A stretch of DNA of 64,000 bases, taken from the NCBI RefSeq assembly GCF_032191835.1, contig NC_083227.1, positions 18,290,001 through 18,354,000 on the forward strand. The letters are read 5' to 3'. This DNA comes from Heteronotia binoei. Taxonomy: Eukaryota. Under the pieces are notes generated by a model, which worked only from the letters and a program-made list of their open reading frames with translations, was not told where the DNA came from and made no database searches. How positions within the stretch are numbered: position 1 is the stretch's first letter; each line of letters starts with the position of its first letter. Position numbers and translations under genes: made by a program. Positions 26,480 to 58,852 of the stretch are shown here, in pieces.

Positions 26480-26518
26480 TATCAATTTAAATTGATAAAC
26501 AGGATGGAGTTCTCTCAC

Positions 26519-38951: not shown

Positions 38952-39266
38952 TCTCAGGCCACACAGAACATCTTAATGAGACTTTGGCACTCAGAATTAT
39001 TCTGCCCATGCTGCAAAGACTTGTTTTCTACAAGGAGGAGTACAGTTATCCTTCAGCTATTGGTTTCCACAATACACACAACACAACGTATTGTCTGATC
39101 GAATAGGTGCCTACTGGGTGAGTGTGTGTGTGTGTTTGCGGGGGGGGGGGCGGGGTGTGGAGTTCCAACCTGTATGGAATTAAAAGCAATTTGTTTTGTT
39201 GATCTTTGTTTACAGGAGGCAGGCTTGGCTCAGAAAATATCGACAGGACATCAGGATCAGGGAAAC

Positions 39267-41189
39267 ATGGATGCTGGTGAGGGGAATTCCACCACTGGCT
39301 CAGTGAAGAAGAGAAAGTACTATTGCTGTTTTAAGGACGATTGGTGCAAAGAAGATGCATTCAAAAACTGGCTCCGGAAGATCGACGGGATGACAGCAGA
39401 ATGCATTCTGTGCCATCAAGGCTTCTCCATAAAATACGAGGGAAGAAGAGCGGTGACCAGCCATGCGGACAGCTCCAAGCACAGGGAATCGGAGAAACAG
39501 CATAAAGACATGCCGCAAATCCCGGTGCTTTTAACCGAAACTGACGTCTACCAGGAAGACATGGTGACCGTTGCAGAACTGGGGCAGGTTTATCACAACA
39601 TCGTGCACCAGCTAAGTTACGCGAGCGAAGATTGCGCATACAAAATGCTCTCGGGGATTTTACCTGATTCCGTTGTGGCAAGAAAAATGTCATGCGGAGC
39701 GGCAAAAGCCACCAGCATCGCAGTGACTGTTTTGGCCCCCAAATCTCAAGAGCTTTTGTTGAAGGAGTTGGAGGAAGTGCCGTTTTTTTCAGTTGGCTCT
39801 GACGCCTACAACAAGGGAAGTAGGCAATATTTCCCCGTGACCATACGTTACTTTTCGGCGACAGAAGGAATTAAGCACGGCTTGCTTGATTTTTATAGCG
39901 AATTGTCGAGCGATTCAGTTGCGTCACGGATTGCCACTATTCTACAGGAAAACGGTCTGAGTGTGACCCGGATGGCCTCGTACATGATTGATAATGCCTC
40001 TGTGGATTTTGGGAAACACTGGTCTGTGTTCCAGGACCTCAAACAGCTTAATGGTGGACTGATACAGGTGGGGTGTATGGGCCACGTGATCCACAATTGC
40101 CTCAAGAAGGCAATGAGGGCACTCAGTTTTGACGTCGAAACCTTCGTCCTCAAGGTGTACAGCGAGTTTTCATCCTCTACCAAAAGGATAGACTCTCTTA
40201 TGTCTTTTTACGAGTTTGTGGAAACAGAGTACAAAGATGTGCTTCAGCACGTCACGACAAGGTGGCTGTCCCTCCTGCCTGCTGTTGACCGTATCCTTGA
40301 AAGCTGGTCCGTGTTGAGGGCGTACTTCTTGTCACTGGGGGAGGACGAGTGCCTCAAGATTGTGTGGGAGGCATTCAGTGCAGACGAACACGCATCCCTC
40401 CCGCTGTGTTATGTTCACTTCATTCACAACCTGATGAGGATTTTTTCCGAGTCCGTGAAGAAACTGGAATGCGACCACGTCACCTGCACGGAATTGCACA
40501 GCGTCCTGGAAAACCTCCATGCCAAGCTCAAGAGAAGGAAGGAGGACAAATTCTACGGGAAATCGTCCCAGGTCATTTTAAGCAACATCTCTGCGTTCGA
40601 GAACCGAAAATTCACCGAGGAAGCGGAGAAGACGCTGTCCCGGTGCATCGCATACCTGGAGCAGTGGTATTATTTTGAGACGTCGATTTTCGAGCAGATG
40701 GCGGTGCTCTCGTTGAACAGCGAGGTGAAGTGGTTCGATTTGGTGACCCTGGTGACGGCCCTCTGTATCGATATTGACATCGACCAGCTGTACAACGAGT
40801 ACTGCGTATTGCAGAAACTCCGAGAAGAGATTGTCTCCAAGGAGCAGAAAGTTGATCAGCGGTGGGTGAAAGTTTTCAGGCAAATCCCAGAACGTGCGGA
40901 GAGCCAGCTGCTGAAGTTAGTCTCTTTCGTGCTTTCCATTCCTGTGTCCAACGCTTTCTGTGAGAAAGTTTACAATCTCATGGCCCAGCTGTGGAGCAAG
41001 GACAAAAACAGACTGAGCGACTGTGTGGTGAAAGCCGAGCTGCAGGTCCAACTGAACTTCAACATTTCCTGCGCAGACTTCCACGAGTTCCTGTACAAGA
41101 ACCCGGAGTTGCTTAGAGCAGCAAGGGGCGAGCCAGAATACAAGTGTAAAAAGGAGGAACCAGAAGATGACATTCCACAGGCATCATAA
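39267..41189 (+). CDS. hAT-superfamily transposase-derived protein A (640 aa), likely domesticated
   Basis: Uninterrupted ORF with KKRK NLS-like motif, BED-like CILC..HADSSKH, catalytic-type D (GSDAYN), D (IDNAS), CxxH (CMGH), TRWLSL and E (SNAFCEK), plus hAT dimerisation-like C-terminus. Acceptor ctttgtttacag| at 39215 lies upstream of the ATG. Confidence 0.88.
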   Translation: MDAGEGNSTTGSVKKRKYYCCFKDDWCKEDAFKNWLRKIDGMTAECILCHQGFSIKYEGRRAVTSHADSSKHRESEKQHKDMPQIPVLLTETDVYQEDMVTVAELGQVYHNIVHQLSYASEDCAYKMLSGILPDSVVARKMSCGAAKATSIAVTVLAPKSQELLLKELEEVPFFSVGSDAYNKGSRQYFPVTIRYFSATEGIKHGLLDFYSELSSDSVASRIATILQENGLSVTRMASYMIDNASVDFGKHWSVFQDLKQLNGGLIQVGCMGHVIHNCLKKAMRALSFDVETFVLKVYSEFSSSTKRIDSLMSFYEFVETEYKDVLQHVTTRWLSLLPAVDRILESWSVLRAYFLSLGEDECLKIVWEAFSADEHASLPLCYVHFIHNLMRIFSESVKKLECDHVTCTELHSVLENLHAKLKRRKEDKFYGKSSQVILSNISAFENRKFTEEAEKTLSRCIAYLEQWYYFETSIFEQMAVLSLNSEVKWFDLVTLVTALCIDIDIDQLYNEYCVLQKLREEIVSKEQKVDQRWVKVFRQIPERAESQLLKLVSFVLSIPVSNAFCEKVYNLMAQLWSKDKNRLSDCVVKAELQVQLNFNISCADFHEFLYKNPELLRAARGEPEYKCKKEEPEDDIPQAS

Positions 41190-41970
41190 CTTTAATGTAA
41201 GAACAGAATGTTATTTACATAGGTTTTAAGTCAATGTAGTTGTACTTGTACAGCGCACAAAGGCCCGGCCCTCTCTGAACCTCTGCCCTTTCAAGATCTT
41301 CCCCAGCCTCTGACCCTTAAAGTCACTGTCCCCAAATCTCCAGAATGGCCAGAGCCTCCAGCTTCACCCATCAGCTGCAAATCCAAGACTGTCAGACTGT
41401 GTTTTCTTGTTTGCCCTCAGGCTAGAACAAACTTGCTTAATGTAAGAGCCACGTAGAATAAATGTCAGATATTTGAGAGCCGCAAGACATGAACATCAGG
41501 TGTTTGAGAGCAAGAAGGAAGGCAAATAGATGGGGGAAAAGAAGGAGAGGTGGAAAGAAAGCAACCTTAACTTTAAATACATTATCCAAACCACTGGCTG
41601 GCTTGGCTTGGAGAAGTGATTTAAAGGGAGAAATGCCTTCTCCAAGCCAGACGACGGGGCGGTAGGGACTTTGAGAGCCGCACAATATGTGTGAAAGAGC
41701 CATATGTGGCTCCCGAACCCCAGTTTGGCCATCAGTAGCCAGTAGGGGGTAGGTTGGCCAAACAATAGCCACCTCCTCTGGTAAAGAGAGAAACAGCGGT
41801 GGATTAGATACCCTATGGATAGTGTCTGGCAGCATCCACAGTGGTTCTCTGCTGTGAGTGCTGAGGGATTTGACACTGAAACAGCATCTTCACTGGGGTT
41901 ACATTCCATTCAGCTCTCAATGCTGCCAGAGGGCTTTTTTCTTGCTATCAGTAGCTGCTATAGCAATATA

Positions 41971-42262
41971 AAAAGGTAAAGGTAGTCCCCTGTGCAAGCA
42001 CCATTTCCAACTCTGGGGTGACGTTGCTTTCACAACGTTTTCATGGCAGACTTTTTACGGGATGGTTTGCCATTGCCTTCCCCAGTCATCTACGCTCCCC
42101 CCCCCCCCCAGCAAGCTGGGCACTCATTTTACCAACCTTGGAAGGCTGAGTCAACCTCGAGCCTGCTGCCTGAACCCAGCTTCCACCGGGATCGAACTCA
42201 GGTCGTGAGCTGAGCTTAGGGCTGCAGTACTGCAGCTTCACCATTCTATGCCACGGGGCTCT
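41971..42262 (-). mobile_element. Sauria SINE with 12-bp TSD
   Basis: Same consensus as 15098-15389; TSD tatagcaatata at 41959 and 42263. Partial copy at 59045-59250. Confidence 0.8.
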
Positions 42263-42565
42263 TATAGCAATATAGTAACTGCCTTTTTTAAAAAAAAAAA
42301 GCTGGCAAAGAGCTCTGTAGTGCAGGGGAAATGGCGGTTACAAAGGGACGATGGTAGTAAAATGGCTCCAGCCATGGGTGGGAATCTCCATCCAGACTAT
42401 GTTCTCACCCGCCAGGACTGTGATCTTCCTGGAAGGATCATAGCAAAACAGGTCTGGGAAAGTGTGAAGTAGAGCAAAGCATGTGAAAATCTGGGAAGGA
42501 TGGTGTCATATGGATGCTCTGGGGTCGGGGCAGGGAATCACTCTGGTTTGGAGGTCAGCGTAGGT

Positions 42566-42942
42566 CAGGGATGTCGAACTCATTTGTTATGAGGGCCGGA
42601 TCTGACATAAACGAGACTTTGTTGGGCCAGGCCATGTGTGTCATAAAATGTGAGGCCAGGTAGCAGACAGAGACAAACACAAAGATTTTCTTAAAAGCTT
42701 AAAACATCAGCACTCTTGCAATATTTTGTTTATTTCTCTGATAACTGACACCTCTCGTTCTGAATTACCACATCAAAAACTGGAGACAAATGTCTGTGCT
42801 GTAGCAATCTTGAGTATGCTGTTCAGGTGTTGTTCAAGTGTGTACCTGTAAGCTGCAAGCCTACTTTTGATTTGCTTGCAGGCCTGATGGGACCCTTCTG
42901 GGGACCTGATCCAGTTCCCAGGCCGCATGTTTGACACCCCTG
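42566..42942. mobile_element. hAT MITE (caggggtgtcaaac family), perfect 8-bp TSD gcgtaggt
   Basis: cagggatgtcgaac / gtttgacacccctg. Confidence 0.85.
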
Positions 42943-44826
42943 GCGTAGGTCAAAACAGCCATGTGGGTGCAGACTTATCTTTTCCCCTGTGCAATTCAAT
43001 TTTTGTCACTCCTATCCCCTCCACTCTCTGTTTCCTCCTCTTGACTTCTATCTACCTTTCAGTTGCAAACTCATGGGGGCCAGGGCTTCTTTTTGAAAAT
43101 GTATTTCTATCTCTGTGTAGAGCGCTGTGTACCTCAAAGGTGCAATCACGGGGATGCCTAAAACAGATTTCACAAAATAAAGGACAGAAAAAAAATGTTT
43201 ATTTTCTTATTTTTTTTAGGTGTTCATCCTGCCTTTTACAGAAGAAATTCAGCGTATGTATGAACCAGCACATCATGGCTGCAAATAATAACCCTCAATA
43301 AATGTTGCTGGAGGACCAAAAACTCTGAGGGGGGGAGAACCCATCTCGGATCCCTTGTGAACTGGATACCTTCTTCTAAATCAGCTAAGTCGGTGGCCAA
43401 TGGGATATGATATAGTTACAACATCAAGAATAATGGGCTGCGTTCTCCTCTCCTTCACCAGTGGCTGCGGTGCTGTGATCTTATAGACTGCTCAAAGTAG
43501 TTTGATGGAACAGATGAAATTGGATGTGATTACTGTACTGTTACAAGCTTAATTTGTTTCCTCCAGAAGCGAGTCACAGTCTGAAACCAAATTAGACAGG
43601 AATAGTTGTTAATGCCCTAACTATACTCTTTGCTGTGAACTACAATGTACTTTGCAGTATCCCATAATCTAGTCTAATCATTTCTAGGGGTGGCCGCTTG
43701 TCAGCTGACCCATTAAAACATTGGCAGTTCTAATAGAAGTTTAGGCAATGTTTAGATGGGTCACCTGACCAGCGTGCTAATCCTAAGAGGCAACCACGAA
43801 TCAAATACCATCATGGGTTAGGCTAGGGTTGCCAGGTTGTTCCTTTAGCGCCAGTGGTGGGATTTGGGGGGCATTTCCGGAGCGGATGGGGACGTTGCGC
43901 GATGTGCTGGTGTCGCTTCCGGAAGTGATGTTTGTGTGTTGGTGACGTCAGGGGAGAGACACTCTGCTTTGGGGGCAAAATATGATTTGAGGGCGATTTT
44001 ACCATAGAGCATTGCCCCCCGTGTCACCGGCTGGCATCACTTCTGGAAGAGATGAAAGCATATTGCACGTGACTTCGCTGTTGGGGGCGGGATTTCCTCT
44101 CGCCAGCCAGCTGGTCCACTGCAGGAAGGAGCACAGAAAAGTGGGGAAACCCCCACCTGGATCTGGGGAATGGTAAGCTTAGGTTGTCAGCTGACCTTTT
44201 AAAATTTCATTCTCCTGTCCTTTGATAGCAGAGGAAGGAGGAGGGCTGCTTGCCATGAGTTCTGCAGCAGAGCAAGAGCGCCTCCTGTTGGCCACCTGCT
44301 ATATAACTGCAGGGATCTCTGGGAAAAATCGGCCTTTAAGAATTTGTTTTTGTTTTGTCTATTTTGGAAGTTGCTGTTACTTAGCTTTATTTCTGTTTTA
44401 ATTTTTTTTTCTGAATTGAAACTGCAGGCTGACCCTGGTTTTCCCCTATAAAAGCCAAAGGGATGGAGAGTTCACATCTATAGAACCTCACCTAATATTG
44501 TTTAAACGTTAAGAGTAATGCATTATAGGGTTTTTAAAAGTGTTTCACAGGAACAACTGACCAGTTTGTTTTGTTAATTAGCAACAGTATCAAACCTGTT
44601 GATGAAATTATCTTTTGTTGCTATTCTAATAAAGCTTATGTTTAGAAAAAAAATCACTTGACCAATCGCTGAATAAATCTTTTTTTCCCCGCTGCCCAGA
44701 CGAATGGACAGTCCGAGCAGAGGTCAATAGTTTTGTCATCCTGAACAGTAAGAATTTGAGTTTCAACTGCAGCTTCATGTGGCTTCCATTTAATGAAAAC
44801 ACATTGCATGCGACTTCACTTTTGGG

Positions 44827-45103
44827 GGGAGCCAGTTTGGTGTAGTGGTTAAGTGTGCGGACTCTTATCTGGGAGAACCGGGTTTGATTCCCCACTCCTC
44901 CACTTGCACCTGCTGGAATGGCCTTGGGTCAGCCATAGCTATCGCAGGAGTTGTCCTTTAAAGGGCTGCTGCTGTGAGAGCCCTCTCCAGCCCCACCCAC
45001 CTCACAGGGTGTCTGTTGTGGGGGAGGAAGATAAAAGAGATCATGGGCCGCTCTGAGACTGATTCAAAGAGAAGGGCAGGGTATAAATCTGCAGTCTTCT
45101 TCT
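44827..45103 (+). mobile_element. Squam3-like SINE
   Basis: gggagccagtttggtgtagtggttaagtgtgcggactcttatctgggagaaccgggtttgattcccc. Further copies at 45850-46060, 46578-46848, 49240-49450, 56026-56188, 59488-59752 and 59870-60050. Confidence 0.8.
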
Positions 45104-48100
45104 TTTTAATATGGTTTCCCTCTTCACTATAAGAAGCTTTGGCCATCAGCTGAACATTCCTATCACAATGTTATCAGCTGGAGGGTCAGTGCCCTCTTCA
45201 TGGAATGCATTTAAAAAGAAATTCTAATGTAGTTCTGGCTGCAGCCTCTAGGGGTGCAGGGAAGGCAGAGCACAGCAGAGAGCTCAGGCCTTTCTGCAAA
45301 GTTTACCAGGAGGTGGAGAGAAACTGCTGATCTGCTCTTGCTCAACCCATCAGCTAAGCCTGCACTGGAGCAAGGAAAGACCGGCCTTCACAGGATGCAG
45401 CCTTCTAAAGGTCTATGGCAGACGTTGCCAAACATGCTTAATGTGAGAACCACATAGAATAAGCATTAAGAACATAAGAGAAGCCATGTTTGATCAGGCC
45501 AATGGCCCATCCAGTCCAACACTGTGTCACACATTGGCCAAAAAAAATTGTGTGTGTGTGTATACACACACATATATACACACTGTGGCTAATAGCCACT
45601 GATGGACCTCTGCTCCATATTTTTATCTAACCCCCATATTTTTATCTAACCCCTTGAAGCTGTCTAGTTGTTTGAGAGCTGCAAGACAGGAAGGAAGGCA
45701 AATAGATGAGGCGAAGGAGAGACAGAAAGAAAGCAACTTTTACATTAAAATGCAGTCTCCAAGCTTCTGGCTGGCTTGGCTTGGAGAAGTGATTTAAAGG
45801 GAGAAATGCTTTCTCCAAGCTGGCTGACAGGAAAAGATGAATACTAATAGCCAGCCTCCACTTGCAGCTGCTGGAATTGCCTTGAGTTAGCCATAGCTCT
45901 TGCAGGAGTTGTCCTTGAAAGGGCAGCTGCTGTGAGAGTCCTCTCAGCCTCACCCACCTCACAGGGTCTCTGTTGTGGGGGGAGAAGATACAGGAGATTG
46001 TAAGCCGCTCAGAGTCTGATCCAGAGAGACGGGCAGGGTATAAATCTGCAGTCTTCTTCTTAAGATTATATTTAGTTTGAATCAGGGGCATAAGGGGGTG
46101 GTCAGACGAAAAATTTGTCCAGGGGCCCATGGTAGCTCTCGGTAGCCCTGCCAATAAAAGGCTTCCATCTGCTAAAGTTTATACTTCAATATGTACCTTT
46201 TAAGCAGCCCTGACCTGAATGGCCCAGGCTCTCATCAGATCTCAAAAGCTAAGCAGGGTTGGCATTTGAATGGGAGACTGCCATGGAAGTCCAGGGTTGC
46301 TATCCAGAGGCAGGCAGGGGCAAACCAGCTCTGCTCATCTCCGGCCTTGAAAGCCCTGGGGGGTCACTATAAGTCAACTGCAAATTGATGGCACTTTCTA
46401 CCACCACTGGGGCAAAAGCCAGGTTTAGCTCTTTCTAAAATATGTCCAAGGGTGTCGCCTGTCTGTTTTATGTCACAGAATTGTTTTATGTTTATGTTTA
46501 ATTTGATTTATACCTCGCCCTCCCCGCCAAGGCAGGCGCAGTAGGAGCCAGGGAATCAAGCCTAGCATTTGTTTGGTGCCAGTTTGGTGTAGTGGTTAAG
46601 TGTGTGGACTAGGAGAACTGGGTTTGATTCCCCACTCCTCCACTTGCACGTACTGGAATGGCCTTGGGTTAGCCATAGCTATCGCAAGAGTTATCCTTGA
46701 AAGGGCAGCTGCTGTGAGAGCTCTCTCAGCCCCGCCCCCCTCACAGGGTGTCTGTTGGGGGGGGAGAAGATATAGGAGATTGTAAGATGCTCAGTCTCTG
46801 ATTCAGAGAGAAGGACGGGGTATAGATCTGCAGTCGTCGTCTTCTTCCTTGCAGATCTCAATGCAATAAGCAGATATTCTCAATTTTTCTTCCATCCCCA
46901 CATCTCTATACTCTGCTCCATTATTGTTAAATCTGTAATGAACTCTGATGCCCAAAACACATAATAGATACAGCGATCTCTTAATGGATTTACTTCTGTG
47001 AATCAGAATTACTGTAACCTAAAAGCATAGATTTATTCAGATGCCACAAACAAACCACAGTCCATTTCTACATGTTAAAGCTTCTATTAAAGGGACAGGG
47101 ACATTTTCCTTCACACCAGTTGTCAACCCTAAATTCAGCAGGTCAGGCCTAATTCTACAAGGTAAGAACACCAGTTAGCTGTGAAGATGAGGGCCATTCT
47201 TGCAGTTGGCCCAAGGTTCTGCAATGCCTTTCTGAATAAGGCACTGAATTGCTGCTTCCTCATCTTCTCTCTCCTTGAAGGGGAATAGCCAAACCTCCAG
47301 CAACTGAACAAAACCAACCACTTTTCCCCAAGAGTCACCCAGTGTTTGTTGGCAACAGAATCTTCACAACTGGCTACTGACAGAAATGGCTTTAAAAAAA
47401 AAAAAGGCAAGGAGATGTGGAAAGCAATCTGGGGTTTTACATAAGAGTGAAAAGCAGAACCTTTGCATTCAGCAGGGCTTTTTTGTAGGAAAAGCCCATC
47501 AGGAGCTCATTTGCATATTAGGCCACACCCCCTGATGGCACCATTGGTTCATACAGGGCTTTTTTGGTTATTATTTATTTTAAATTTCTATCCCACCCTC
47601 TTTGCAAGCGGACTCAGGGCGGCTAACAACATTCATATTTACAAGTTAAAACTAATAAAACATAATTACAATTTAAAACCATTTTGTGGTGCTGTACCAC
47701 TACAATATAAGCGAGTTCTTTTTTTCTTCTGATGGTGATCACATAGTATTTATTTATTTATTCGATTTATATCCCGCCTTCCCCACCGAGGCGGGCTCAG
47801 GGCGGTTTACTCTATAGTAACTCTATAATGATGTGGGGTGGCAGTTCTCTCCCGGTTAGATATCAAAGGCCTGTTGGAACAGTTCGGTCTTACAGGCCCT
47901 GCAGAAAGTAGAAAGATTTTGTAGAACAAGCCCAGTAGGAACTCATTTGCATTTTAGGCCACACCCCTTGCTGCCAATCCAGCTGGAGCTGTGTGCCTGC
48001 TCAAAAAAAAAAAAAAAGCCCTGGCATTTAGGAACAGTTTATCTGCAGTGACCTCAAGCCAGAGCACAGAATCGGCTGATGGGTGAATAAAAAATGTACT

Positions 48101-50061: not shown

Positions 50062-50591
50062 CTAGTGGGACTTGGTGCTTGTGGGGGGGCACAGTGGGAG
50101 GGCTTCTAGTGTCCTGGCCCCACTGGTGGACCTCCTGACGGCACCTGATTCTTTTGGCCACTGTGTGACACAGAGTGTTGGACTGGAGGGACCACTGGCC
50201 TGATCCAACATGGCTTCTCTTATGTTCTTATGGGGCAGTGATGCTCTGTATTCTTGGTGCTGGGGAGGGCCAACAGTGGGAGGGCTTCTAGCATCCTGCC
50301 CCCACTGGTGGACCTTCTGACGGCACCTGATTTTTTGGCCACTGTGTGACACAGAGTGTTGGACTGGAGGGACCACTGGCCTGATCCAACATGGCTTCTC
50401 TTATGTTCTTATGGGGCAGTGATGCTCTGTATTCTTGGTGCTGGGGAGGGCCAACAGTGGGAGGGCTTCTAGCATCCTGCCCCCACTGGTGGACCTTCTG
50501 ACGGCACCTGATTTTTTGGCCACTGTGTGACTCAGAGTGTTGGACTGGATGGACCACTGGCCTGATCCAACATGGCTTCTCTTATGTTCTT
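50062..50591 (+). repeat. Three tandem CR1 3'-end units (two are 181 bp and nearly identical)
   Basis: Units start near 50062, 50231 and 50412; each ends ggcttctcttatgttctta. Confidence 0.88.
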
Positions 50592-52689
50592 ACGACTTGT
50601 AGCTGACAGGTGGTTCCCATCTTGTAGCCGTTGCCAATGAAGGAACTGGAAAGCTGTCAGCCTTTCTGAGTTACACATTTCATAGAAGGGACTGGAGTAA
50701 ACATGGCTCAGTGGAAGAGCATCTGTTTGCCACACAGAAGGTCCCAGGTTCAATCCCCAGCAGCTTCAGTTTAAAAGGAAAAAAGATGATGATGAGAAAG
50801 ATTTCTGCCAGAGACTCGAGAGCTGCCGTCTGAGTAGGCAGTGCTACCTTGATGGACCCAGGGTCTGATTCAATATAAGGCAGCTTCATGAGCGCATACA
50901 TGTGTGGCTCTTTCGGTTGAGGGCAACTGCCAATGCAGCTCTCCACAAGCCACAGAATGAGTCCCAGTCTTGTTGGGTGTTCCTTGCATTGGAACTTCAG
51001 TTGCGAGAGGTGGGATGTAAAGCAATTGTTCAGCAGATTGTAAAGCAGAGCAAGCTGAAAATGACGCAGCCCTTAGGGTGCAAGACAGAATCACAGAAAG
51101 TTAGGGTTTGAAGTGATGCAAGAGGTCTTCTAGTCTCAACTTTGGCTCAGTGCAGGTCTCCCAGGAGCACCTGTGCACCTCCAGGAATAACAGCAGGTTG
51201 CCACCCCTCCCTGTAGAGATCTGGTGTGGGGTAATAAATTGGTTGCTCTTTTCCTTCACCTGTGCTCTTAGGTATTTTTAAATAAAACAAATGCTATAAA
51301 AACATCCAGCAGTCCCTAGTCTCGTGCTTTCTCACCCAAAGAAACAGACACCCTCCAGCACTGCACCAGGAAGCTGCCTCCCTGGCACTGATGCCAAAAC
51401 TCCTGGGGGTGGCTGAATGCTTTTTTTTTTTTTGAGGGGGTGTCAGCTTCCTGGTAAAGGGAAACAAAATGCATTTAAAACAAGGGAAATATCTAGTGCA
51501 GCGGTGGCCAAACTTGCATAAGAGCCACACAGAATAAACATCAGGTGTTTGAGAGCTGCAAGACATGAACGCCAGGAAGAGAAAGAAAGAAAATGGATTT
51601 GGGGGGTTAGACGGTTGGAAAGAATGCAACTTTAACTTTAAATGCATTTTCCAACCCCACCCCCCAATGTCAGCTGGCTTGGAGACCCGATTTTAAGAGA
51701 CAAATGCCTTCTGCAAGCTGGGCAACAGGGTGGTGTGGGCTTTGAAAGCCACATAATATGCGCAAAAGAGCCACATGTAGCTCCCCAAGCCAGTTTGGCC
51801 ACTCCTGACAAGCATATTTTTCTCTTGTCCTTCCCCCTAGGAGTTCAGAGTAGCATGCATTCTTCTCCCTGCCCTGTTTCAGCCTCACAATGACACAGTG
51901 ATGTAGGTTAGGCTGAGGGTCACAGCCCTGAATAGGCCAGGAGAAAAAAAACGTCTCAGTGTGGCAATTGACATAAGAAAGCTGTTCATATCATTCCGTC
52001 AAGCTTGTATTAAAGGGGTGGGTTATTTTTCTTCAGTCCTGTTGGCAAGTCTTAACTTAGACGGCTTTTGTTTCTGAGAGCCGCAGCTTGTGAGGAGGTA
52101 AAAGGGGTGTGACTCAGAAGGCGAGCTGAGGTTGCTAACTCTGGGTTGTGAAATTCCTGGTGATTTGGAGACATAAGGTGGGGATCAGTGTTCCCTCTAA
52201 GCTGAGTTAGCATGAGCTAGCTCACAGATTTTGGTCTTAGTTCAGGAAGGATGTCCCCAGAGCACGATAATTTATGCAGTAGCTCACAACTTTAATGCCA
52301 GAAGCTCACAAAGTAGAATTTTTGCTCCCAAGACTCTGCAGCTTAGAGGGAACATTGGGTGGGGATCTGGAGAGAGGAGGGATCTAAGTACGGTATAACA
52401 TACAACAGAGCCCTCCCCTCCCAAAGCAGCCATTTTCTCCACGGAGCTGAACTCTGTCGTCTGAAGATCGGCAGCCATTCCGGGAGATCTCCAGCCCCAC
52501 CTGGAGGCTGGCAACTTAAAGTCGGGCCGGTTCATGTGTTTGAAGGAAGGAGCGCGGCTCAGGTAGAGCGACTGCTCTGCATTTGCAACGCAAACTTTTT
52601 TTTCCTCTCCTGGAGCCACGATTAGACCCTCCACCCTGCCGGGAACAGGCTCCGCATGGCACCATGCAAATCCCCAGGGATAGCTTGCA

Positions 52690-53018
52690 ACTCACCCACC
52701 CCATTTCCGGAAGCACTCGGGCTGCGCATCCGCTGGCGAGCCGACCGGATGTAGGTCGCACCCCTCTAGGAATCCCTGCGATGGTGTCGTCTCTTTGGTA
52801 GAAGAGCGTAGAGGAATGCTTAGGGCCCTGGGGAAGTCGGGTGGTTCCTAGAGCGGCGGGGGGGGGGGAGGGAGAGAGAGCTTCTTTTCTCCCCTCTCGC
52901 TAGCATCGGAGAGGGCCGACCTTTCCCCCCCCACGCCGAAAGCAGAGTCCGAGAGCCTTGCAAGCAAAGAAGCGTTTGCATCAGAGCGAAGGAGAGAGCG
53001 GGGACCGAGGAGGAGAAG
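52690..53018 (+). promoter_or_regulatory. CpG-rich promoter / non-coding exon 1 of transposase-derived gene B
   Basis: CpG-dense. Shares tctaggaatccc, cgtctctttggtagaa and ttcctagagcggc with 33500-33830. Donor GAAG|gtaaca at 53019. Confidence 0.65.
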
Positions 53019-53749
53019 GTAACAAGGGTTTGGAGCTGGTGTCGGGTGCTCGTGGGTGGTTTTCTCAGGCCAGCCGACCTCGGAAGAGCAGACAACTAGG
53101 CATGCTGCTGCGAGCTTTTGGAGACGGCGCGGATAAGATTTTTTTTAAAAAATGAATAGATGAGAAAGAAATATGCATTGAAGCCCACTGGGACCCAAAG
53201 GAAACCCCTGCATATTGTGGCCCTGATCCCACCCACCCCCCCGCCGCCCTTGTCCCCCGTAGCAAGCAATGGGTCCAGGCGGGGTGAGAAATTGTACGTG
53301 ACTTTAAAAAAAATAATTGTAGACAGTCGTACTCTCAGGCTAAAAACGACAAGGGAAGGGGGCGAGCCGGTTTTGCATTGATTTTGCAGATTTTTGCATT
53401 GAGAACTTCCTTCTCAATGAGCATTTAATCTCTCTTCTCTCCCCACCCCCCGTATTCTTTAGGATTCCCCAACAACACCATTGTGTGAGCTGCAGCTGGA
53501 TATGGGGGGCTGGGGGGGGAGAGGCATGCTTCTGGATAGAGAGGTGCCCCTCCGTAGAAGTTTTGAGGTCAGAGCCAAGCCAGAAAGTGCATTTTGAGCA
53601 GGTATGATATTCCAATTGAGGAGGAAATTTTCACTGTCACCTAACAGCTAGCGCCCCAGAATTCTGTCCGGGCTCATGCCAAACTATAACACACAGCAGC
53701 ATGTCAGACTCATTCAGATGGCTCGGAGTAGGTCCCAAATGCACTAGAT

Positions 53750-54087
53750 CAGGGGTGGCCAAACTTGCTTAACATAAGAACCACATAGAACAAATGTCAG
53801 ATGTTTGAGAGCCACAAGACATGAACGTCAAATGTTTGAGAGCTGCAAGACAGGAAAAAAGGAGGGCAGGCAGGCAAATAGATTGGGGGAGGGGGAGGTG
53901 AAAAGAAAGCAACTTTAACTTTAAATGCCTTCTCCAAGCTGCTGGCTGGCTTGACTTAGAGAAGTGATTTAAAGAGAGAAATGCCTTCTCCAAGCTGGCC
54001 AACAGGGTGGGGGGGCGGGGCTTCAAGACCCACACAATATGTATGAAAGCCACGTGTGGCTCCTGAGCCACTGTTTGGCCACCCCTG
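53750..54087. mobile_element. hAT MITE, perfect 8-bp TSD cactagat (intron of gene B)
   Basis: caggggtggccaaac / gtttggccacccctg. Relatives at 41418-41760, 51499-51807 and 58384-58686 (TSD gaatagtt/gaatagtc). Confidence 0.85.
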
Positions 54088-54945
54088 CACTAGATACATA
54101 CTGATGTAAATGGCAAAATTATGGACTTGGCCTGGGAAAGAGGTAAGCTCAGAAAGTGAGGAAGAGACATGTTCCCTGTGAGGCTACCATCCCAACTGCA
54201 ACAAGGAGGAGTGCTTAATTAATTGAATTATACTTGTCAGTGCAGGCTGTGGTTTGTGCCTTGCGGTAAGAGTGCAAAGATTTGTTAACCTTCTGCAAGT
54301 GATTTATGAAGCTTCTACAATACTCTTACCAATTATACACTGCTCTGCTCCAGAATAGACATGACTGATATTTTCATATTTGGCAATAGTTACATTGCTT
54401 GTGAAAACGAATACCTACATTTTTAGATGGAGCCTAGAGCCTAAGAAAAAATGTGTCAAGGCCTAGCCAATCCTTGTTCAGCCAGTGCATTTAAGCAAGA
54501 AAGTAAAAGAACTGTTAAATGGCAGCATTAATTCTGTAGAAGTGGTCGAACATAAGAGAAGCCATGTTGGATCAGGCCAATGGGCCATCCAGTCCAACAC
54601 TCTGCATCACACAGTGGCCTATACACACACACAGATTTTCTGGTTGTCTCTGTTTGCAACCAGGGAAAGTGAGAAATGAAGAGAGCAAGACACCAATGAA
54701 AACATATTTGCATCTTGAGGACTACAGTGATGTGATAGTGAGTCCAATAGAACTTCTCAGTGAGCATGTGCTGGGTTGTGAGCCAAGGGGCAAGGCATCC
54801 CACAGGGTGGGCTTGGAAAAGCAAGACACCTGAAAATCCACACTGATGGATCTAGAGAAACTTCCAGTGCAATCCCGAGCAAAGTTGCACCATTCTACAC
54901 CCATTGGCCTCCAAGGACTTAAAAGGGTGTAACTCTGTTTAGGGA

Positions 54946-55175
54946 TAGAACAAAGTTGGAGTCAAGTTGCACCTTTAAAGACCAACAAAGTTTTATTCAG
55001 AACGGAAGCTTTCATGTGCTGTAAGCACATTTCATCAGACGAGTATTTAGGAATCATCATCGTCTGATGAAGTGCGCTTAGAGAGCACACAAAAGCTTCC
55101 CTTCTGAATAAAACTTTGTTGGTCTTAAAGGTGCAACTGGACTCCTGCTTTGTTCTACTGCTTCAGACCAACACG
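54946..55175. mobile_element. Penelope-like inverted repeat (about 97-bp arms, 17-nt spacer)
   Basis: gttgcacctttaaagaccaacaaagttttattcagaa..catcagacga / tcgtctgatg..ttctgaataaaactttgttggtcttaaaggtgcaac. Single arms at about 1935-2003, 11035-11085, 35810-35965 and 38440-38530. The class assignment is from memory. Confidence 0.6.
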
Positions 55176-56390
55176 GCTGCCCGCTTGGAGCTGTCTGTTT
55201 AGGAATGCGCTTATTTCAGATTGAATCTGAAATACTCCTAGAAGTTTACAGATCGTTGCCTTTGTTTGCAAGTGGTTCATGACTGCGATCCTAGACCTGC
55301 TTAAGAGTCGCCTCAGTGTATTGATTTTGCAGATTTTTGCATTGAGAACTTCTTTCTCAATGAGCATTTAATCTCTCTTCTCCCCCCACTCCCCGTATTC
55401 CTTAGGATCCCCCAGCAACACCATGTGTGAGCTGGAGATGGAGGGGGGTGGGGGGAGAGAAGCATGTGTTGTACATTTATTTTTCTTAGTAATTGTGGAT
55501 AAAGAGCAGTGGGGAGGGGCATGTTCTGTGGGGGACTGTGGGCTGGATCCAGATTATTCTTTCAGCAAAACAAAAGTCTCCCCCCCCCCACACGCACACG
55601 CAGTGCTCCTTGAGATGGGGAACTCAGAGGAATCACACGAAAAGGGGGTCTACGGTGGGAATGGAGGATCAGTGGGAATTGCAGTTTAGTCTAGATCTGA
55701 CCCTGTAGTTAGAGAGTTAGACTAGGATCTGGGATAACTCAGATTTGGATCCCTACTCTGCTGAGGAAGCTCAGTGGGTTTCCTCGGGCCAGTCACTCAC
55801 AGCCTAACCTACAGAATGGAGGAGAAGAGAAGGGCGTTGTAAGCTGCTTTGGGTCTCCGTTGGGGAGAAAAGTGGCGTATTAAATATTTAACTAAATTTG
55901 TATCAGTTCTTCAGAGGTTTCACAGCATTTCAGGCTACACAGAACTTCTAAATGAGACTGTGGAGCTCAAAAGGATGGATTCTGCTCATACTCCTCAGTC
56001 TCATTTTCTCTGAAAGGGAAGAAGATATTGGATTTATATCCCGCCCTATAATCTGAATCTCAGAGTCTCAGAGCAGTCACAGTCTCCTTTACCTTCCCCC
56101 CCCCCACAACAGACACCCTGTGAGGTGGGTGGGGCTGAGAGAGCTCTCACAGCAGCTGCAGTCCACGCACTTAACCACTACACCAAACTCCCAAACTGGG
56201 AGTGCTGTGGAACATGAAACCATGCAACATCCTTCAGCTGTCATGTTGTGTGATGGGGGAAACTGCCTACCTGGTGTGTTTGTGGGCTGTGACCTATATA
56301 GAATGAAAGGCAATTTGTGTTGTTGTTGTTTTGTTTACAGGAAGCAGACTTTGCTCAAAAATACGGACAGAACATTAGGATCAGGGCAAC

Positions 56391-58322
56391 ATGGATGCCA
56401 GTGAGGGGAATACAACCACTAGCTCAGTGAAGAAGAGAAAGTATTATTGCTACTTTAAGGATGAATGGTGCAAAGAAGAGGCGTTCAGAGGCTGGCTTCA
56501 CAAAGTGGACATGGTGACGGCCGAATGCATTCTGTGCCATCAGGGATTCTCCATAAAATATGAGGGAAGAGGAGCAGTGACCAGCCACGCAGACAGCTCC
56601 AAGCACAAAGAACTGGAGAAACAACGCAAAGAAATGCCAGAAATCGTGACTTTTTTTAACAAAGCAAACTTCTCCCAAGAAGACATGGTGACAGCGGCGG
56701 AGGTAGGACAGGTATATCACAGCATTGTGCACCATCTGAGTTATGCGAGCCAAGCTTGTGCGTATAAAACGCTCTCGCGGATCTTACCTGATTCGGTCGT
56801 GGCGAGAAAAATGTCTTGCGGGCGGACGAAAGCCACCAGCATTGCGGAAAGCGTCTTGGCCCCCAAGTCGCGGGAACTTTTGCTGAAGGACTTGGAGGCT
56901 GCGCCTTATTTTTCCATTGGATCGGATGCCTCCAACAAGAGGAATAAGAAATTCTTCCCGGTCACTGTGCGTTACTTTTCGGTGACCGAGGGAATTAAGC
57001 ACGGCCTGCTTGATTTCTACAACGAATTGACAAGCGATTCGATTGCAACACGGATCGCCATTATTCTGCAAGAGAATGGCCTCAATGTGAGCAGAGTGTC
57101 ATCTTACATGATTGATAATGCCTCTGTGGATTTTGCAAAGCACTGGGCAGTGTTCCAGGACCTCAAGCAACTTAATGATGGACTGATACAAGTGGGGTGT
57201 ATGGGCCGTGTCATCCACAACTGCCTCAAAAAGGGGATGAGGGCGCTGAGTTTTGACGTAGAAACCCTGATTTTCAAGATATACAGCGAGTTTTCGTCCT
57301 CACCCAAGAAGACCGAGTCCCTTACGTCGTTTTTTGAGTTTGTGGAAACAGACTACAAAGATGTGCTTCAGCAGGTATCGACGGGGTGGCTTGCTCTCCT
57401 GCCCGCCATTGACCGCGTCCTCGAAAACTGGTCAGTGTTGAGGGCGTACTTCTTGTCAGAAGGGGACGAAGAGTGCGTGAAGATCGTGTGGGAAGCGTTC
57501 AATGCGGAAGAGCACGAGTCTCTCCCTCTTTGTTACGTTCACTTTGTGCACAACCTGATGAGAATATTTTCCGACGCTGTGAAGAAACTGGAATGCGACC
57601 ATGTCGGCAGCACAGAATTGCACGGTGTCTTGGAAGGCCTCCACTGCAAGCTCAAGAGAAGAAGAGAGGACAAATTCTATGGAAGATCCGCCCAAGTCAT
57701 TTTGGGCAACATCTCTGTCTTTGACAACCAAAAATTCACCGAGGAAGCGGAGAACATGTTGACACAGTGCATTGCATACTTGGAGGAGTGTTACAATTTC
57801 AAAGCTGCCGTTTTTGAGCCGATGGCCGTGCTGTCGCTTAACAACGAAGTCAAGTGGCCGGATTTGGTGGCTCTGGTGGCAGCCCTCCGCATTGAGATAG
57901 ACATCGACCAGCTCTACAATGAGTATTGCGTTCTGCAGAAGTTCCGAGAAGAGATTGTCTCCAAGGAGCAGAGAATAGATCAGCGGTGGGTGAAAGTTTT
58001 CAGGCAAATCCCGGAGCGTGCGGAGAGCCAGCTGCTGAAGTTGGTCTCTTTCGTGCTTTCCATTCCCGTGTCCAACACCTTCTGTGAGAAAATCTACAGT
58101 CTCATGGCCCAGCTGTGGAGCAAGGACAGAAACAGACTGAGCGACAGTGTGGTGAAAGCCGAGCTGCAGGTCCAGCTGAACTTCAATATTTCCTGTGCGG
58201 ACTTCCATGAATTCCTGTACAGGAACCCAGAGCTACTGAGAGCTGCAAGGGGTCAGCAGAAATACAGGTTTAAAAAGGAAGAACCGGAGGGTGCTGCCTT
58301 TCCCTTGGCGATCCAGTTTTAA
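56391..58322 (+). CDS. hAT-superfamily transposase-derived protein B (643 aa), paralog of A
   Basis: Colinear with A without evident gaps, roughly three-quarters identical by eye. Has GSDASN, IDNAS and SNTFCEK. Acceptor ttttgtttacag| at 56340; ATG in aacATGg context. Confidence 0.88.
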   Translation: MDASEGNTTTSSVKKRKYYCYFKDEWCKEEAFRGWLHKVDMVTAECILCHQGFSIKYEGRGAVTSHADSSKHKELEKQRKEMPEIVTFFNKANFSQEDMVTAAEVGQVYHSIVHHLSYASQACAYKTLSRILPDSVVARKMSCGRTKATSIAESVLAPKSRELLLKDLEAAPYFSIGSDASNKRNKKFFPVTVRYFSVTEGIKHGLLDFYNELTSDSIATRIAIILQENGLNVSRVSSYMIDNASVDFAKHWAVFQDLKQLNDGLIQVGCMGRVIHNCLKKGMRALSFDVETLIFKIYSEFSSSPKKTESLTSFFEFVETDYKDVLQQVSTGWLALLPAIDRVLENWSVLRAYFLSEGDEECVKIVWEAFNAEEHESLPLCYVHFVHNLMRIFSDAVKKLECDHVGSTELHGVLEGLHCKLKRRREDKFYGRSAQVILGNISVFDNQKFTEEAENMLTQCIAYLEECYNFKAAVFEPMAVLSLNNEVKWPDLVALVAALRIEIDIDQLYNEYCVLQKFREEIVSKEQRIDQRWVKVFRQIPERAESQLLKLVSFVLSIPVSNTFCEKIYSLMAQLWSKDRNRLSDSVVKAELQVQLNFNISCADFHEFLYRNPELLRAARGQQKYRFKKEEPEGAAFPLAIQF

Positions 58323-58852
58323 GGTAAAAACCTAATTATATTGAATTATTTAAGTAGCTTAATGGGTCAGTGTGGGAATAGTTCAGGGGTGGCCAAACTG
58401 TGGCTCAGGAGCCACATGTGGTTCTTTCACATATATTGTGTGGCTCTTGAAGCCCCCGCCACCCTTTGACTTGGAAAAGGCATTTCTCTCTTTAAATCAC
58501 TTAACCAAGCCAGGTGGTGATTTGGAGAATGCATTTAAAGTTGCTTTCTTTCCACCTCTCTCTCCCTCCTCCATCTTTTCCCCTTCCTTCCTCTCTCAAA
58601 TATCTGACATTCAATGTCTCGAGGCTCTCAAACATCTGATGTTTATTCTATGTGGCTCTTACGTTAAGCAAGTTTGGCTACCCCTGGAATAGTCTGTAGT
58701 ACACACAGGCTGTGTCTCCCGAGCCCTTCCCCAGGAACTAATCCAAACATACAGTGGGAGAACTGGGGCACACGTGAAGCAACGATCAAAAAATCCCCGG
58801 TTTCAATAACAGTTTCCTAAGACACAATCCTATCTTGTGCAGTAGACATAAA

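What the first reader, a model, noticed from the sequence alone, without database searches (positions are those of the whole stretch)
39267..58322. Tandem pair of intact, TIR-less hAT transposase-derived genes: candidate undescribed domesticated transposase family in a ZNF cluster
Seen: two ORFs of 640 and 643 aa, 17 kb apart on the same strand, colinear with no stops or frameshifts, about 75% identical by eye. In the 46 codons I aligned (40989-41126 vs 58113-58250) there are 10 synonymous and 3 non-synonymous codon differences. Both ORFs are fed by a splice acceptor, and I see no TIR/TSD around either. The old CR1/L2 remnants around them are decayed, while these two ORFs stay fully open. Established: hAT transposases have a BED finger, DDE triad, CxxH, RW motif and C-terminal dimerisation domain; mammals have domesticated hAT genes (ZBED family, ZNF862), one of which (SCAND3/ZBED9) lies in a ZSCAN cluster. 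Inference: these are host genes under purifying selection, possibly a lineage-specific squamate domestication, and they could homo- or heterodimerise as DNA-binding regulators.
Basis: partly seen in the sequence, partly recalled or inferred. Interest (0 to 1): 0.85.

Follow-up and report, generated by a model that had tools for sequence, protein, structure and literature searches.

The report
Ancient gecko pair of domesticated hAT genes
Two neighbouring genes in a gecko genome are former "jumping gene" (hAT transposase) enzymes that stopped moving over roughly 100 million years ago, have been kept intact and expressed by geckos ever since, and have diverged so that one keeps every catalytic hallmark while the other has rebuilt its active-site surroundings.

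Summary
ORF A (39267-41189) and ORF B (56391-58322) are intact, gapless and 78% identical, with paralog dN/dS 0.14. The window is Heteronotia binoei CM063329.1.

The domestication reading is strongly supported:
- The A-then-B tandem pair sits at the same SCAN-ZNF locus in Gekko, Paroedura, Eublepharis and Sphaerodactylus, with colinear non-coding flanks.
- A and B orthologs form separate clades that each mirror the species tree.
- Ortholog dN/dS is 0.04-0.08.
- No TIRs were found.
- B is spliced, with a 53018>56341 GT..AG joint in four RNA runs.
- Promoter, exon 1, acceptor and a post-stop donor are paralogous and conserved in both genes.

The fold and profile are a full-length hAT transposase (Hermes). 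Identity to ZNF862, ZBED5 and SCAND3 is only 12-16%, so this is not a named gene.

New here:
- All A orthologs keep DDE, CxxH and RW.
- All B orthologs keep DDE but fixed H273R, R332G, G184R, W467C and R61G.
- The same genome has two further paralogs, one fused to KRAB.
- Turtles and some mammals have separate relatives at other loci.

Function and dimerisation remain untested. This is a new, undescribed member of a known kind.

The parts
33480..33830 (+). Gene A promoter and non-coding exon 1 (predicted); donor AAAAG|GTAAGA at 33830/33831
   Evidence: Paralogous to B exon 1 and its promoter. Invariant CCGGAAGTA, GTCTCTTTGGTAG, TTCCTAGAGCGG, CGCCAAAAG and the AAG|GTAA donor occur in all five aligned sequences (window A, window B, G. 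japonicus B, Eublepharis A and B). This is the most CpG-rich stretch upstream of A. It is not verified by reads.
39020..39215 (+). Conserved 3' end of A intron 1 (about 200 nt) ending in polypyrimidine tract + CAG acceptor
   Evidence: Conserved between A and B orthologs. About 110 nt is also shared with the paralogs P0032 and P0091 at other loci. Its function is unexplained.
39216..41196 (+). Gene A exon 2, carrying the whole ORF (39267-41189, 640 aa), followed by donor AAT|GTAAGA at 41196/41197
   Evidence: RNA contigs in runs X1-X3 hold 48-71% of its sampled words. A keeps D179, D242, C270xxH273, R332-W333 and E566.
42950..44795 (+). Conserved non-coding blocks downstream of A (candidate 3' exon or exons, or a regulatory region)
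   Evidence: Colinear matches at 68-76% identity in Paroedura, Eublepharis and Sphaerodactylus. Not verified by reads.
52501..53018 (+). Gene B CpG island, promoter and non-coding exon 1 (observed in RNA from at least 52885 to 53018); donor GAGAAG|GTAACA
   Evidence: CpG island. Conserved with exon 1 of the G. japonicus gene model. An RNA contig joins 52885-53016(+2) to 56339(+2)-57134.
53019..56340 (+). Gene B intron 1 (3322 nt, GT..AG)
   Evidence: The joint is seen in raw reads of X14 and X15 and in contigs of X1 and X3, from two studies.
56341..58324 (+). Gene B exon 2, carrying the whole ORF (56391-58322, 643 aa); an in-frame TAG lies 5 codons upstream of the ATG; donor TAAG|GTAAAA at 58324/58325
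   Evidence: RNA contigs tile 56339-58324 and then leave the genome sequence at the donor. B keeps the DDE triad but carries H273R, R332G, G184R, W467C and R61G.
61800..63900 (+). Conserved non-coding blocks downstream of B (candidate 3' exon or exons)
   Evidence: Colinear matches in G. japonicus (75-82%), Eublepharis (65-72%) and Sphaerodactylus (71%). Not verified by reads.
26462..27244 (-). SCAN-domain exon of the neighbouring ZNF gene (context)
   Evidence: Pfam SCAN, E=2e-40. A SCAN gene also lies upstream of A on the minus strand in Paroedura.

Best explanation
A and B are two host genes descended from one hAT transposase that became immobile in an ancestor of geckos and was then duplicated in tandem. 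The duplicated unit was the whole transcription unit: ETS-motif/CpG promoter, non-coding exon 1, intron, and an internal exon holding the complete ORF, followed by a splice donor.

**Shown.**
- The duplication predates the split of Eublepharidae, Sphaerodactylidae and Gekkonidae.
- Both copies have stayed at the same SCAN-ZNF locus.
- Both are under very strong purifying selection.
- Both are present in RNA libraries, and B is shown to be spliced.
- The protein is a full-length hAT transposase fold: a BED-like CCHH finger, an RNase-H-like core with the DDE triad, an alpha-helical insertion and the hAT C-terminal region.
- Divergence is asymmetric. A has only conservative lineage-specific changes and keeps DDE, CxxH and RW.
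- B fixed radical changes at otherwise invariant sites next to the active site (G184R, H273R, R332G), and also W467C and R61G in the finger. It then froze.

**Inferred.**
- Both are nuclear (KKRK motif), sequence-specific DNA-binding proteins that act as dimers or oligomers, as hAT transposases do.
- A may retain DNA cleavage or strand-transfer ability.
- B is a non-catalytic or altered-specificity partner or regulator.
- The shared exon architecture, and a KRAB-fused sister paralog in the same genome, suggest the ancestor arose by transposase capture into a spliced host transcript in a ZNF cluster.
For: **Integrity and similarity.**

**Orthology and synteny.**
- The window is colinear with G. 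japonicus around B, and with Eublepharis around A and on towards B.
- The A-then-B tandem occurs in Paroedura, Eublepharis (genes 10.6 kb apart) and Sphaerodactylus.
- Conserved colinear non-coding blocks are present in all of them.
- Cluster look-ups show one A and one B ortholog per species.

**Trees.** The A clade has SH-aLRT 99 and the B clade 100, and each follows the species tree. Codon positions 1+2 and codons 0-530 give the same result.

**Selection.** Ortholog dN/dS is 0.04-0.08 in both clades.

**Immobility.** No TIRs were found.

**Expression.**
- Both genes are assembled in RNA libraries of about 100 Mb.
- The GT..AG joint 53018>56341 appears in four runs of two studies, and contigs tile the B ORF up to the donor at 58324.

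**Gene structure.** Exon 1 and its promoter are paralogous. The donor TTTAAG|GTAAAA after the stop is conserved in all 8 orthologs.

**hAT identity.**
- The family profile matches Hermes at E about 4e-6, aligning PTRW and the SER/CER motif.
- 32 of 38 family members hit Pfam Dimer_Tnp_hAT.
- The AF2 model has pLDDT 82. It matches Hermes at E=1.5e-9 and ZNF862, ZBED5 and others.

**Motifs and polarised changes.**

**KRAB-fused sister paralog with the same junctions.**
Against: - No functional data exist. Retention of DDE under dN/dS of about 0.05 is not independent evidence of catalysis, because nearly every residue is conserved.
- A's transcription rests on RNA-library contigs only. Its exon 1 and 3' donor are inferred by paralogy and conservation, not read-verified. 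In this species the A donor has T at position -1.
- Pfam Dimer_Tnp_hAT is below the gathering threshold for A and B themselves (15.4 and 18 bits against 21.4).
- The C-terminal 110 codons do not resolve A from B, so local gene conversion cannot be excluded.
- Absence from other squamates rests on annotated proteomes, not on genome searches.
- The dimerisation test gave no verdict (see Tried and rejected).
Confidence: 0.85

Rival explanations
1. The two ORFs are autonomous hAT transposon copies, either still mobile or only recently immobilised. On this reading their low dN/dS reflects selection among transposon lineages, not host function.
For: The DDE triad is intact in both copies. The parent lineage is large and widespread: 302 clusters at E<=1e-30, spanning fish, sharks and insects. 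Two further paralogs sit at other loci in the same genome.
Against: - Each copy sits at the same position, with colinear non-coding flanks, in five species of three families.
- The gene trees follow the species tree.
- No TIRs were found.
- There is one A and one B per annotated genome.
- Each gene has a host-type promoter and exon 1, with splicing.
Confidence: 0.02
2. A and B are gecko orthologs of an already named vertebrate hAT-derived gene, such as ZNF862, ZBED5/8/9 (SCAND3), FAM200, EPM2AIP1 or KIAA1586. On this reading there is nothing new.
For: NCBI named the G. japonicus A ortholog 'zinc finger protein 862-like'. ZNF862 is the best structural match among reviewed proteins, at E=2.8e-18. 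SCAND3 also lies in a ZSCAN cluster (established knowledge).
Against: - Identity to all of these proteins is only 12-16%.
- No mammalian or avian ortholog appears at high identity.
- The nearest non-gecko relatives are a turtle gene at another locus (63%) and shark and fish sequences (about 45%).
- The mammalian relatives (33%) lie at the RSRP1 locus and fall in a separate clade.
- A and B carry no SCAN, KRAB or MYM domain.
Confidence: 0.03
3. Both proteins are purely non-catalytic DNA-binding regulators, such as ZBED-like transcription factors or repressors of related hAT transposons. On this reading the 'catalytic' residues in A are kept only for folding, and B's changes alter DNA or partner specificity rather than switching off an activity.
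For: - Most domesticated hAT genes act as DNA-binding regulators (established knowledge on the ZBED family).
- The BED-like CCHH finger is nearly invariant.
- The sister paralog P0091 has lost the triad and is fused to a KRAB repressor domain.
- The genes lie in a transcription-factor cluster.
- A conserved 200-nt block upstream of the ORF exon in all paralogs could be a self-binding site.
Against: - A has kept every hAT catalytic hallmark (D, D, E, CxxH, RW) in all five species. Meanwhile the paralogs B and P0091, and the lemur relatives, lost some of these hallmarks, which shows the sites can change when unconstrained.
- A-derived changes are all conservative.
Confidence: 0.35
4. The gecko pair, the turtle gene and the Heteronotia paralogs all descend from a single much older reptile-wide domestication. 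On this reading the gene later moved or duplicated to new loci and was lost in other squamates, birds and crocodilians.
For: - Turtles are the sister group of the gecko clade in the tree (SH-aLRT 89-92).
- The turtle protein is at least 90% conserved across eight turtle species, including Pelodiscus.
- The Heteronotia paralogs share intronic flanks with A and B.
Against: - The turtle gene lies between SUPV3L1 and VPS26, which is a different locus.
- It lacks the gecko acceptor and donor context, and its RNA or DNA contig is colinear with the genome.
- Shark sequences nest inside the turtle clade, and an unnamed sequence and P0032 branch nearby. This is what a transposon phylogeny with independent captures would look like.
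Confidence: 0.12

Closest known systems
Hermes transposase (Musca domestica hAT; PDB 2BW3, 4D1Q, 6DWW, 8EDG)
   Same: - The overall fold is shared over about 500 aligned columns (Foldseek E=1.5e-9).
- The family profile matches the Hermes sequence at E about 4e-6. The PTRW motif aligns to Hermes R318-W319, and the C-terminal CER/SER motif aligns to the glutamate of Hermes SERTFS.
- A keeps the D, D, E, CxxH and RW motifs.
   Different: - Identity is 13-16%.
- There are no TIRs or TSDs, and the position has been fixed for on the order of 100 My.
- The gene is a spliced host gene with its own promoter exon.
- B carries H273R and R332G in the CxxH and RW motifs.
Human hAT-derived host genes: ZNF862, ZBED5, ZBED9/SCAND3, ZMYM1/6, KIAA1586, FAM200A/B/C, EPM2AIP1, C17orf113
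   Same: - They are the same kind of entity: an immobile, single-exon-ORF, full-length hAT transposase-derived protein.
- They are structural matches at E from 1e-18 to 1e-11.
- SCAND3 likewise lies in a ZSCAN cluster (established knowledge).
   Different: - Identity is only 12-16%, so A and B are not orthologs of any of them.
- A and B have no fused SCAN, KRAB or MYM domain.
- They are restricted to geckos.
- They exist as an anciently duplicated pair with asymmetric active-site divergence.
Host-transposase fusion genes formed by transposase capture (Cosby et al., bioRxiv 10.1101/2020.05.07.082677; e.g. KRABINER)
   Same: - The transposase ORF lies in an internal exon bounded by an acceptor and a donor.
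- The sister paralog P0091 in the same genome is spliced in frame to KRAB exons.
- The setting is a ZNF cluster.
   Different: - In A and B the ORF starts and stops inside the exon. B has an in-frame stop upstream of its ATG, and in both the stop precedes the donor. No host domain is therefore fused.
- The gene was not found in that paper's main text or held supplements.
Turtle relative (e.g. Mauremys mutica KAH1167559, Pelodiscus XP_014428299)
   Same: - It is the closest non-gecko relative (62-64% identity).
- It is single copy, about 651 aa, and at least 90% conserved across eight turtle species.
- All hAT motifs are canonical.
   Different: - It sits at a different locus, between SUPV3L1 and VPS26.
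- It lacks the gecko splice-site context.
- Its GC3 is 0.34, against 0.63-0.79 in gekkonids.

Membership tests
hAT transposase superfamily (protein homology) | RNase-H-like catalytic core with a D, D, E triad | tested here: met
   D179, D242 and E566 are present in all A and B orthologs. E566 aligns with the glutamate of Hermes SERTFS. The fold matches Hermes.
hAT transposase superfamily (protein homology) | Large all-alpha insertion domain between the second D and the E | tested here: met
   The AF2 model has helices spanning about residues 271-560, with pLDDT mostly above 85. It aligns over about 500 columns with Hermes.
hAT transposase superfamily (protein homology) | C-terminal hAT dimerisation region (Pfam PF05699) | tested here: inconclusive
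   A scores 15.4 bits and B 18 bits, both below the 21.4-bit cut-off. However, 32 of 38 aligned family members match (best 2e-10), and the family profile matches this region of Hermes.
hAT transposase superfamily (protein homology) | CxxH and RW signature motifs | tested here: met
   The feature is met for A (CMGH, TRW) in all five species. It is not met for B (CMGR, TGW) in all five species.
hAT transposase superfamily (protein homology) | N-terminal BED-type zinc finger (CCHH) | tested here: inconclusive
   C46, C49, H66 and H72 are invariant or nearly so. The model shows three strands plus a helix at residues 36-67. Pfam zf-BED matched only 1 of 38 members, weakly.
Mobile hAT transposon (element) | Terminal inverted repeats and 8-bp target-site duplication; variable genomic position | tested here: not met
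   No TIR candidates were found. The position is fixed, with colinear flanks, in five species.
Domesticated transposase host gene | Orthologs at a syntenic position across species, with a gene tree that follows the species tree | tested here: met
Domesticated transposase host gene | Purifying selection on the coding sequence between orthologs | tested here: met
   Nei-Gojobori dN/dS is 0.04-0.08 for ten ortholog pairs.
Domesticated transposase host gene | Transcribed and processed as a host mRNA | tested here: met
   For B, a GT..AG splice joint from a CpG-island exon appears in four RNA runs, and contigs tile the ORF. For A, the gene is present in RNA-library contigs only; its splice sites are inferred.
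Domesticated transposase host gene | Demonstrated cellular function | not testable with these tools
   This requires knock-out, ChIP or biochemical experiments.
ZBED / ZNF862 / SCAND3 gene families (orthology) | Sequence orthology to a named member, and its accessory domains (SCAN, KRAB, MYM) | tested here: not met
   Identity is 12-16%. Pfam finds no accessory domain. The phylogenetically nearest sequences are reptile, shark and fish hAT sequences.

The most novel reading that the evidence does not exclude
Gene A may be a still-active domesticated hAT recombinase or nuclease, working with its active-site-remodelled paralog B as a heteromeric complex. The pair has been kept for on the order of 100 My and could carry out a programmed DNA transaction in geckos: site-specific cleavage, hairpin formation or rearrangement. 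One candidate site is the conserved 200-nt block that all paralogs carry upstream of the ORF exon. This would be a vertebrate analogue of RAG1/2, PGBD5 or yeast Kat1.
Probability: 0.1. Interest if true: 0.85.

Novelty: new member of a known kind. Interest (0 to 1): 0.55.

Why it matters
Domesticated transposases are a recurrent source of new vertebrate regulators and, rarely, of new DNA-cutting enzymes such as RAG.

This pair is an unusually clean natural experiment, for four reasons:
- There was a single domestication.
- There was an ancient whole-gene tandem duplication.
- Both copies have been frozen by strong selection.
- One copy keeps every catalytic hallmark, while the other changed five otherwise invariant residues around the active site and the finger.

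Two further points add value:
- A KRAB-fused sister paralog in the same genome links 'stand-alone' domesticated transposases to the transposase-capture route in ZNF clusters.
- Separate relatives fixed in turtles and at the mammalian RSRP1 locus suggest that this hAT lineage has been co-opted repeatedly in amniotes.

Paroedura picta and Eublepharis macularius are laboratory geckos, so the genes can be tested experimentally.

Tried and rejected
1. **A-B complex.** A structure-prediction test of the A-B pair (residues 92-584 of each) gave no verdict and is not used as evidence either way.
2. **Gene conversion between A and B.**
   - Third-position distances and a four-point check seemed to group paralogs within a species.
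   - However, GC3 differs strongly by species: 0.47-0.49 in Eublepharis, 0.63-0.65 here and 0.79 in Paroedura A. The third-position tree still recovers the A and B clades except in Eublepharis.
   - The signal is therefore mostly compositional convergence.
   - Only the C-terminal 110 codons remain unresolved.
3. **TIR hunt.** A general inverted-repeat scan, a search for the reverse complement of the conserved upstream block and an upstream-versus-downstream short-match search in six copies found nothing beyond poly-G/C runs and SINE copies.
4. **Direct Pfam scan of A and B.** This gave only sub-threshold hAT hits. The family profile and the fold were needed.
5. **Literature.**
   - Searches for gecko, hAT and domestication terms found no description of these genes.
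   - Neither the host-transposase-fusion catalogue nor its held supplements mention them.
   - A search for RSRP1 plus transposase found nothing relevant.
   - One query was swamped by 'hatchling'.
6. **Scan notes.** The look-up by place near the window and the look-up by sequence were both blank.
7. **'Heteronotia lacks A/B'.** I first thought so. This was wrong, because the window itself is Heteronotia binoei.

Full report
**1. Observation**

- The window holds two long + strand ORFs: 39126/39267-41189 and 56391-58322.
- From their ATGs they encode 640 and 643 aa. The proteins align without gaps at 493/633 identical residues, 78%.
- Over the full length, Nei-Gojobori gives dN 0.11, dS 0.80, dN/dS 0.14. 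Differences fall at 33% of third codon positions but only 10-13% of first and second positions.
- DNA similarity between the copies is limited to 39168-41164 versus 56292-58288. Everything else shared within the window is dispersed repeats.
- Upstream of each ATG the shared block ends in a polypyrimidine tract and TTTACAG|G. In B an in-frame TAG lies five codons before the ATG, so that ATG is the start.
- The neighbours are SCAN exons (7109-8020 and 26462-27244, minus strand), C2H2 arrays (3048-4295 and 17727-18674, minus strand) and a LINE reverse-transcriptase ORF.

**2. What the protein is**

- A direct Pfam scan gives only sub-threshold hits to the hAT C-terminal region.
- A 38-sequence family alignment gives a profile that matches Hermes transposase at E about 4e-6. 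It aligns PTRW to Hermes R318-W319 and CERvFS to Hermes SERTFS.
- 32 of 38 family members hit Dimer_Tnp_hAT.
- An AlphaFold2 model of A (pLDDT 82, pTM 0.74) matches Hermes structures at E=1.5e-9.
- Among reviewed proteins it matches ZNF862, ZBED5, C17orf113, ZMYM1, KIAA1586, SCAND3, EPM2AIP1 and FAM200C, all at only 12-16% identity.
- A and B are therefore full-length hAT-transposase-fold proteins and are not orthologs of any named gene.
- The parent lineage is large: 5018 representative clusters at E<=1e-3 and 302 at E<=1e-30. It includes shark, fish, coelacanth and insect sequences.

**3. Immobility and age**

- Exact look-ups show the window's own proteins are already in public databases (P0056 = A, P0051 = B). 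The window is Heteronotia binoei CM063329.1, at about 18.29-18.354 Mb.
- Each of Gekko japonicus, Paroedura picta, Eublepharis macularius and Sphaerodactylus townsendi has exactly one A-type and one B-type predicted protein.
- The genes lie in the same order and orientation in these species:

| Species | Arrangement |
|---|---|
| Paroedura | A at L003:10001-11950, B from 20732, SCAN gene upstream on the minus strand |
| Eublepharis | A and B 10.6 kb apart on one chromosome |
| Sphaerodactylus | A at L010:1702-3627, B exon at 14853-16784 |

- Non-coding flanks are colinear with the window at 65-82% identity, upstream of A, between the genes and downstream of B.
- A maximum-likelihood tree gives an A clade (SH-aLRT 99) and a B clade (100). 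Each is ordered Eublepharis, then Sphaerodactylus, then gekkonids. Codon positions 1+2 and codons 0-530 give the same topology.
- The duplication therefore predates the split of these three families. From memory of published gecko timetrees that is on the order of 100 My; this was not tested here.
- Ortholog dN/dS is 0.04-0.08 in both clades.
- No terminal inverted repeats exist.
- No other squamate appeared in three protein searches.

**4. Gene structure and expression**

- A CpG island lies at 52.5-53.1 kb.
- The exon-1 donor of the G. japonicus gene model is conserved there. This predicted a splice from about 53.02 kb to 56.34 kb.
- Laid reads confirmed it. The joint 53016>56339 (equivalently 53018>56341), with GT..AG ends, appears in raw reads of two RNA-seq runs and in contigs of two other RNA runs. 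One 952-nt contig covers 52885-53016 plus 56339-57134.
- Contigs tile the B ORF to 58324 and then continue elsewhere. At 58324/58325 there is a donor, TAAG|GTAAAA, two bases after the stop.
- The motif TTTAAG|GTAAAA follows the ORF in all eight A and B orthologs. In B its TAA is the stop codon.
- The region 33480-33830 upstream of A is paralogous to B's promoter and exon 1. Invariant CCGGAAGTA (an ETS-type core), TTCCTAGAGCGG, CGCCAAAAG and the AAG|GTAA donor occur in five sequences.
- The duplicated unit was thus a complete spliced gene.
- Both genes are assembled in RNA libraries of only about 100 Mb (48-71% of sampled words). That is far too little data for genomic contamination of a gecko-sized genome to assemble (inference).

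**5. Asymmetric divergence**

- All five A orthologs keep D179, D242, C270xxH273, R332-W333 and E566.
- All five B orthologs keep the triad but have CMGR and TGW.
- Fixed A/B differences were polarised with nine outgroups:

| Copy | Derived changes | Character |
|---|---|---|
| B | R61G (finger), Q84E, Q161R, G184R (five residues after D179), G249A, H273R, R332G, W467C | Several at positions invariant in the family |
| A | V39I, A171V, V236M, F315Y, R432K, A434S | All conservative |

- After these changes B evolved even more slowly than A.
- This is the signature of one copy conserving the ancestral activity while the other was remodelled once and then constrained.

**6. Relatives**

- **P0032.** H. 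binoei has this 55%-identical paralog on another chromosome, next to Ashwin.
- **P0091.** This 52%-identical paralog lies 2.5 Mb from the window.
  - Its hAT exon is internal and spliced in frame to downstream KRAB exons.
  - Its motifs have decayed: D1>N, C270>D, R332>Q, E566>D.
  - It is sister to A+B (SH-aLRT 96, on a long branch).
  - It shares the roughly 200-nt upstream intron block, the acceptor and an AAG|GTAAA donor.
  - P0032 shares about 110 nt of that block.
  - These flanks are either transposon-borne splice signals (transposase capture) or were carried along by DNA-level duplication. I could not decide which.
- **Turtles.** They carry a single relative, at least 90% conserved across eight species, between SUPV3L1 and VPS26. 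Its motifs are canonical and it lacks the gecko splice context.
- **Mammals.** Lemurs and a rhinoceros have a 33%-identical relative, spliced to RSRP1 exons, next to TMEM50. It falls in a different clade.

**7. Mechanism**

- *Shown:* these are immobile, selected, expressed host genes with a complete hAT fold.
- *Inferred:* they are nuclear DNA-binding proteins acting as oligomers. A is possibly still catalytic. B is a non-catalytic or re-specified partner.
- The main internal rival is that both are purely regulatory. That is about as likely as retained catalysis and needs biochemistry to resolve.

**8. Novelty**

- I found no paper on these genes. They exist only as automatic 'uncharacterized' predictions.
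- Domesticated hAT genes are a well-known kind, so this is a new member. Three features are of interest: an ancient duplicated pair, asymmetric active-site evolution, and a KRAB-fused sister.

**9. Scan note**

A first-reader note (s1-335889) reports another intact hAT gene in a SCAN-ZNF cluster 8.6 Mb beyond this window. I could not check it.

Noticed in passing
L011:10001-37621 (H. binoei CM063329.1, about 15.73-15.78 Mb, 2.5 Mb from the window): P0091 is an 811-aa paralog whose internal hAT exon (L011:21449-23368) is spliced in frame to an upstream coding exon and to downstream KRAB exons. Its catalytic motifs are degenerate (D1>N, C270>D, R332>Q, E566>D). It is sister to A+B in the tree and shares their acceptor, upstream block and donor. 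It looks like a KRAB-transposase fusion gene.
   Followed up: partly
L005:10001-11932 (H. binoei, other chromosome): P0032 is an intact 643-aa paralog (55% identical) next to the Ashwin gene. It is a singleton in the databases. It shares about 110 nt of the intron block upstream of the acceptor with A and B, even though dS is saturated.
   Followed up: partly
L006:10001-11956 (Mauremys mutica) and cluster P0005/P0058-P0064: Turtles carry a single-copy 651-aa relative between SUPV3L1 and VPS26. It is at least 90% identical across eight species, including Pelodiscus, and all hAT motifs are canonical. It looks like a separate, undescribed domesticated hAT gene.
   Followed up: partly
L008:10001-19343 (Lemur catta); P0040, P0041, P0068: Lemurs and black rhinoceros have predicted proteins of about 730 aa in which RSRP1 (Arg/Ser-rich protein 1) exons are joined to a hAT transposase-like ORF of the same broad family (33% identity). 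The gene lies next to TMEM50. In lemurs the first catalytic D is N. No literature was found.
   Followed up: partly
window 39267-41189 and 56391-58322, with orthologs: GC3 of these genes varies widely by species: turtle 0.34, Eublepharis 0.47-0.49, H. binoei 0.63-0.65, Paroedura A 0.79. GC at codon positions 1+2 stays at about 0.42. This makes paralogs look alike at silent sites and mimics gene conversion.
   Followed up: yes
window 20330-22183 (+): A 617-aa open reading frame with a reverse-transcriptase domain (RVT_1, E=8e-34) lies between the two SCAN-ZNF genes. It is preceded by a CpG-rich stretch at 19.9-20.3 kb. This LINE copy is not decayed.
   Followed up: no
window 54548-54620, 55949-56190, 53585-54175 and many other sites (e.g. 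22709-22969, 25287-25565, 27499-27777, 36433-36688, 44830-45107, 59510-59751): Dispersed SINE-like repeat families are present. They are extremely abundant in the RNA libraries, with depths up to 1e5 in contig words. They account for the inverted pair that flanks gene B.
   Followed up: no
window 50071-50592: Three tandem units of about 181 bp occur here (50071-50411 vs 50253-50592, 96% identical), derived from a repeat that is also present at 4484-4745, 29322-29613, 37382-37612 and 60069-60370.
   Followed up: no
L010:14853-16784 (Sphaerodactylus townsendi B ortholog): The usual start codon is replaced (the protein begins ...NAEAGEGH in place of MDA.EG). The NCBI model therefore uses an upstream exon, giving a 712-aa protein. 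This suggests the start context of B is not fixed across geckos.
   Followed up: no
same chromosome, 8.6 Mb beyond the window end (scan note s1-335889): A first-reader note reports another 'intact but catalytically dead hAT transposase gene inside a SCAN-ZNF cluster'. It may be a fifth family member. I did not inspect it.
   Followed up: no
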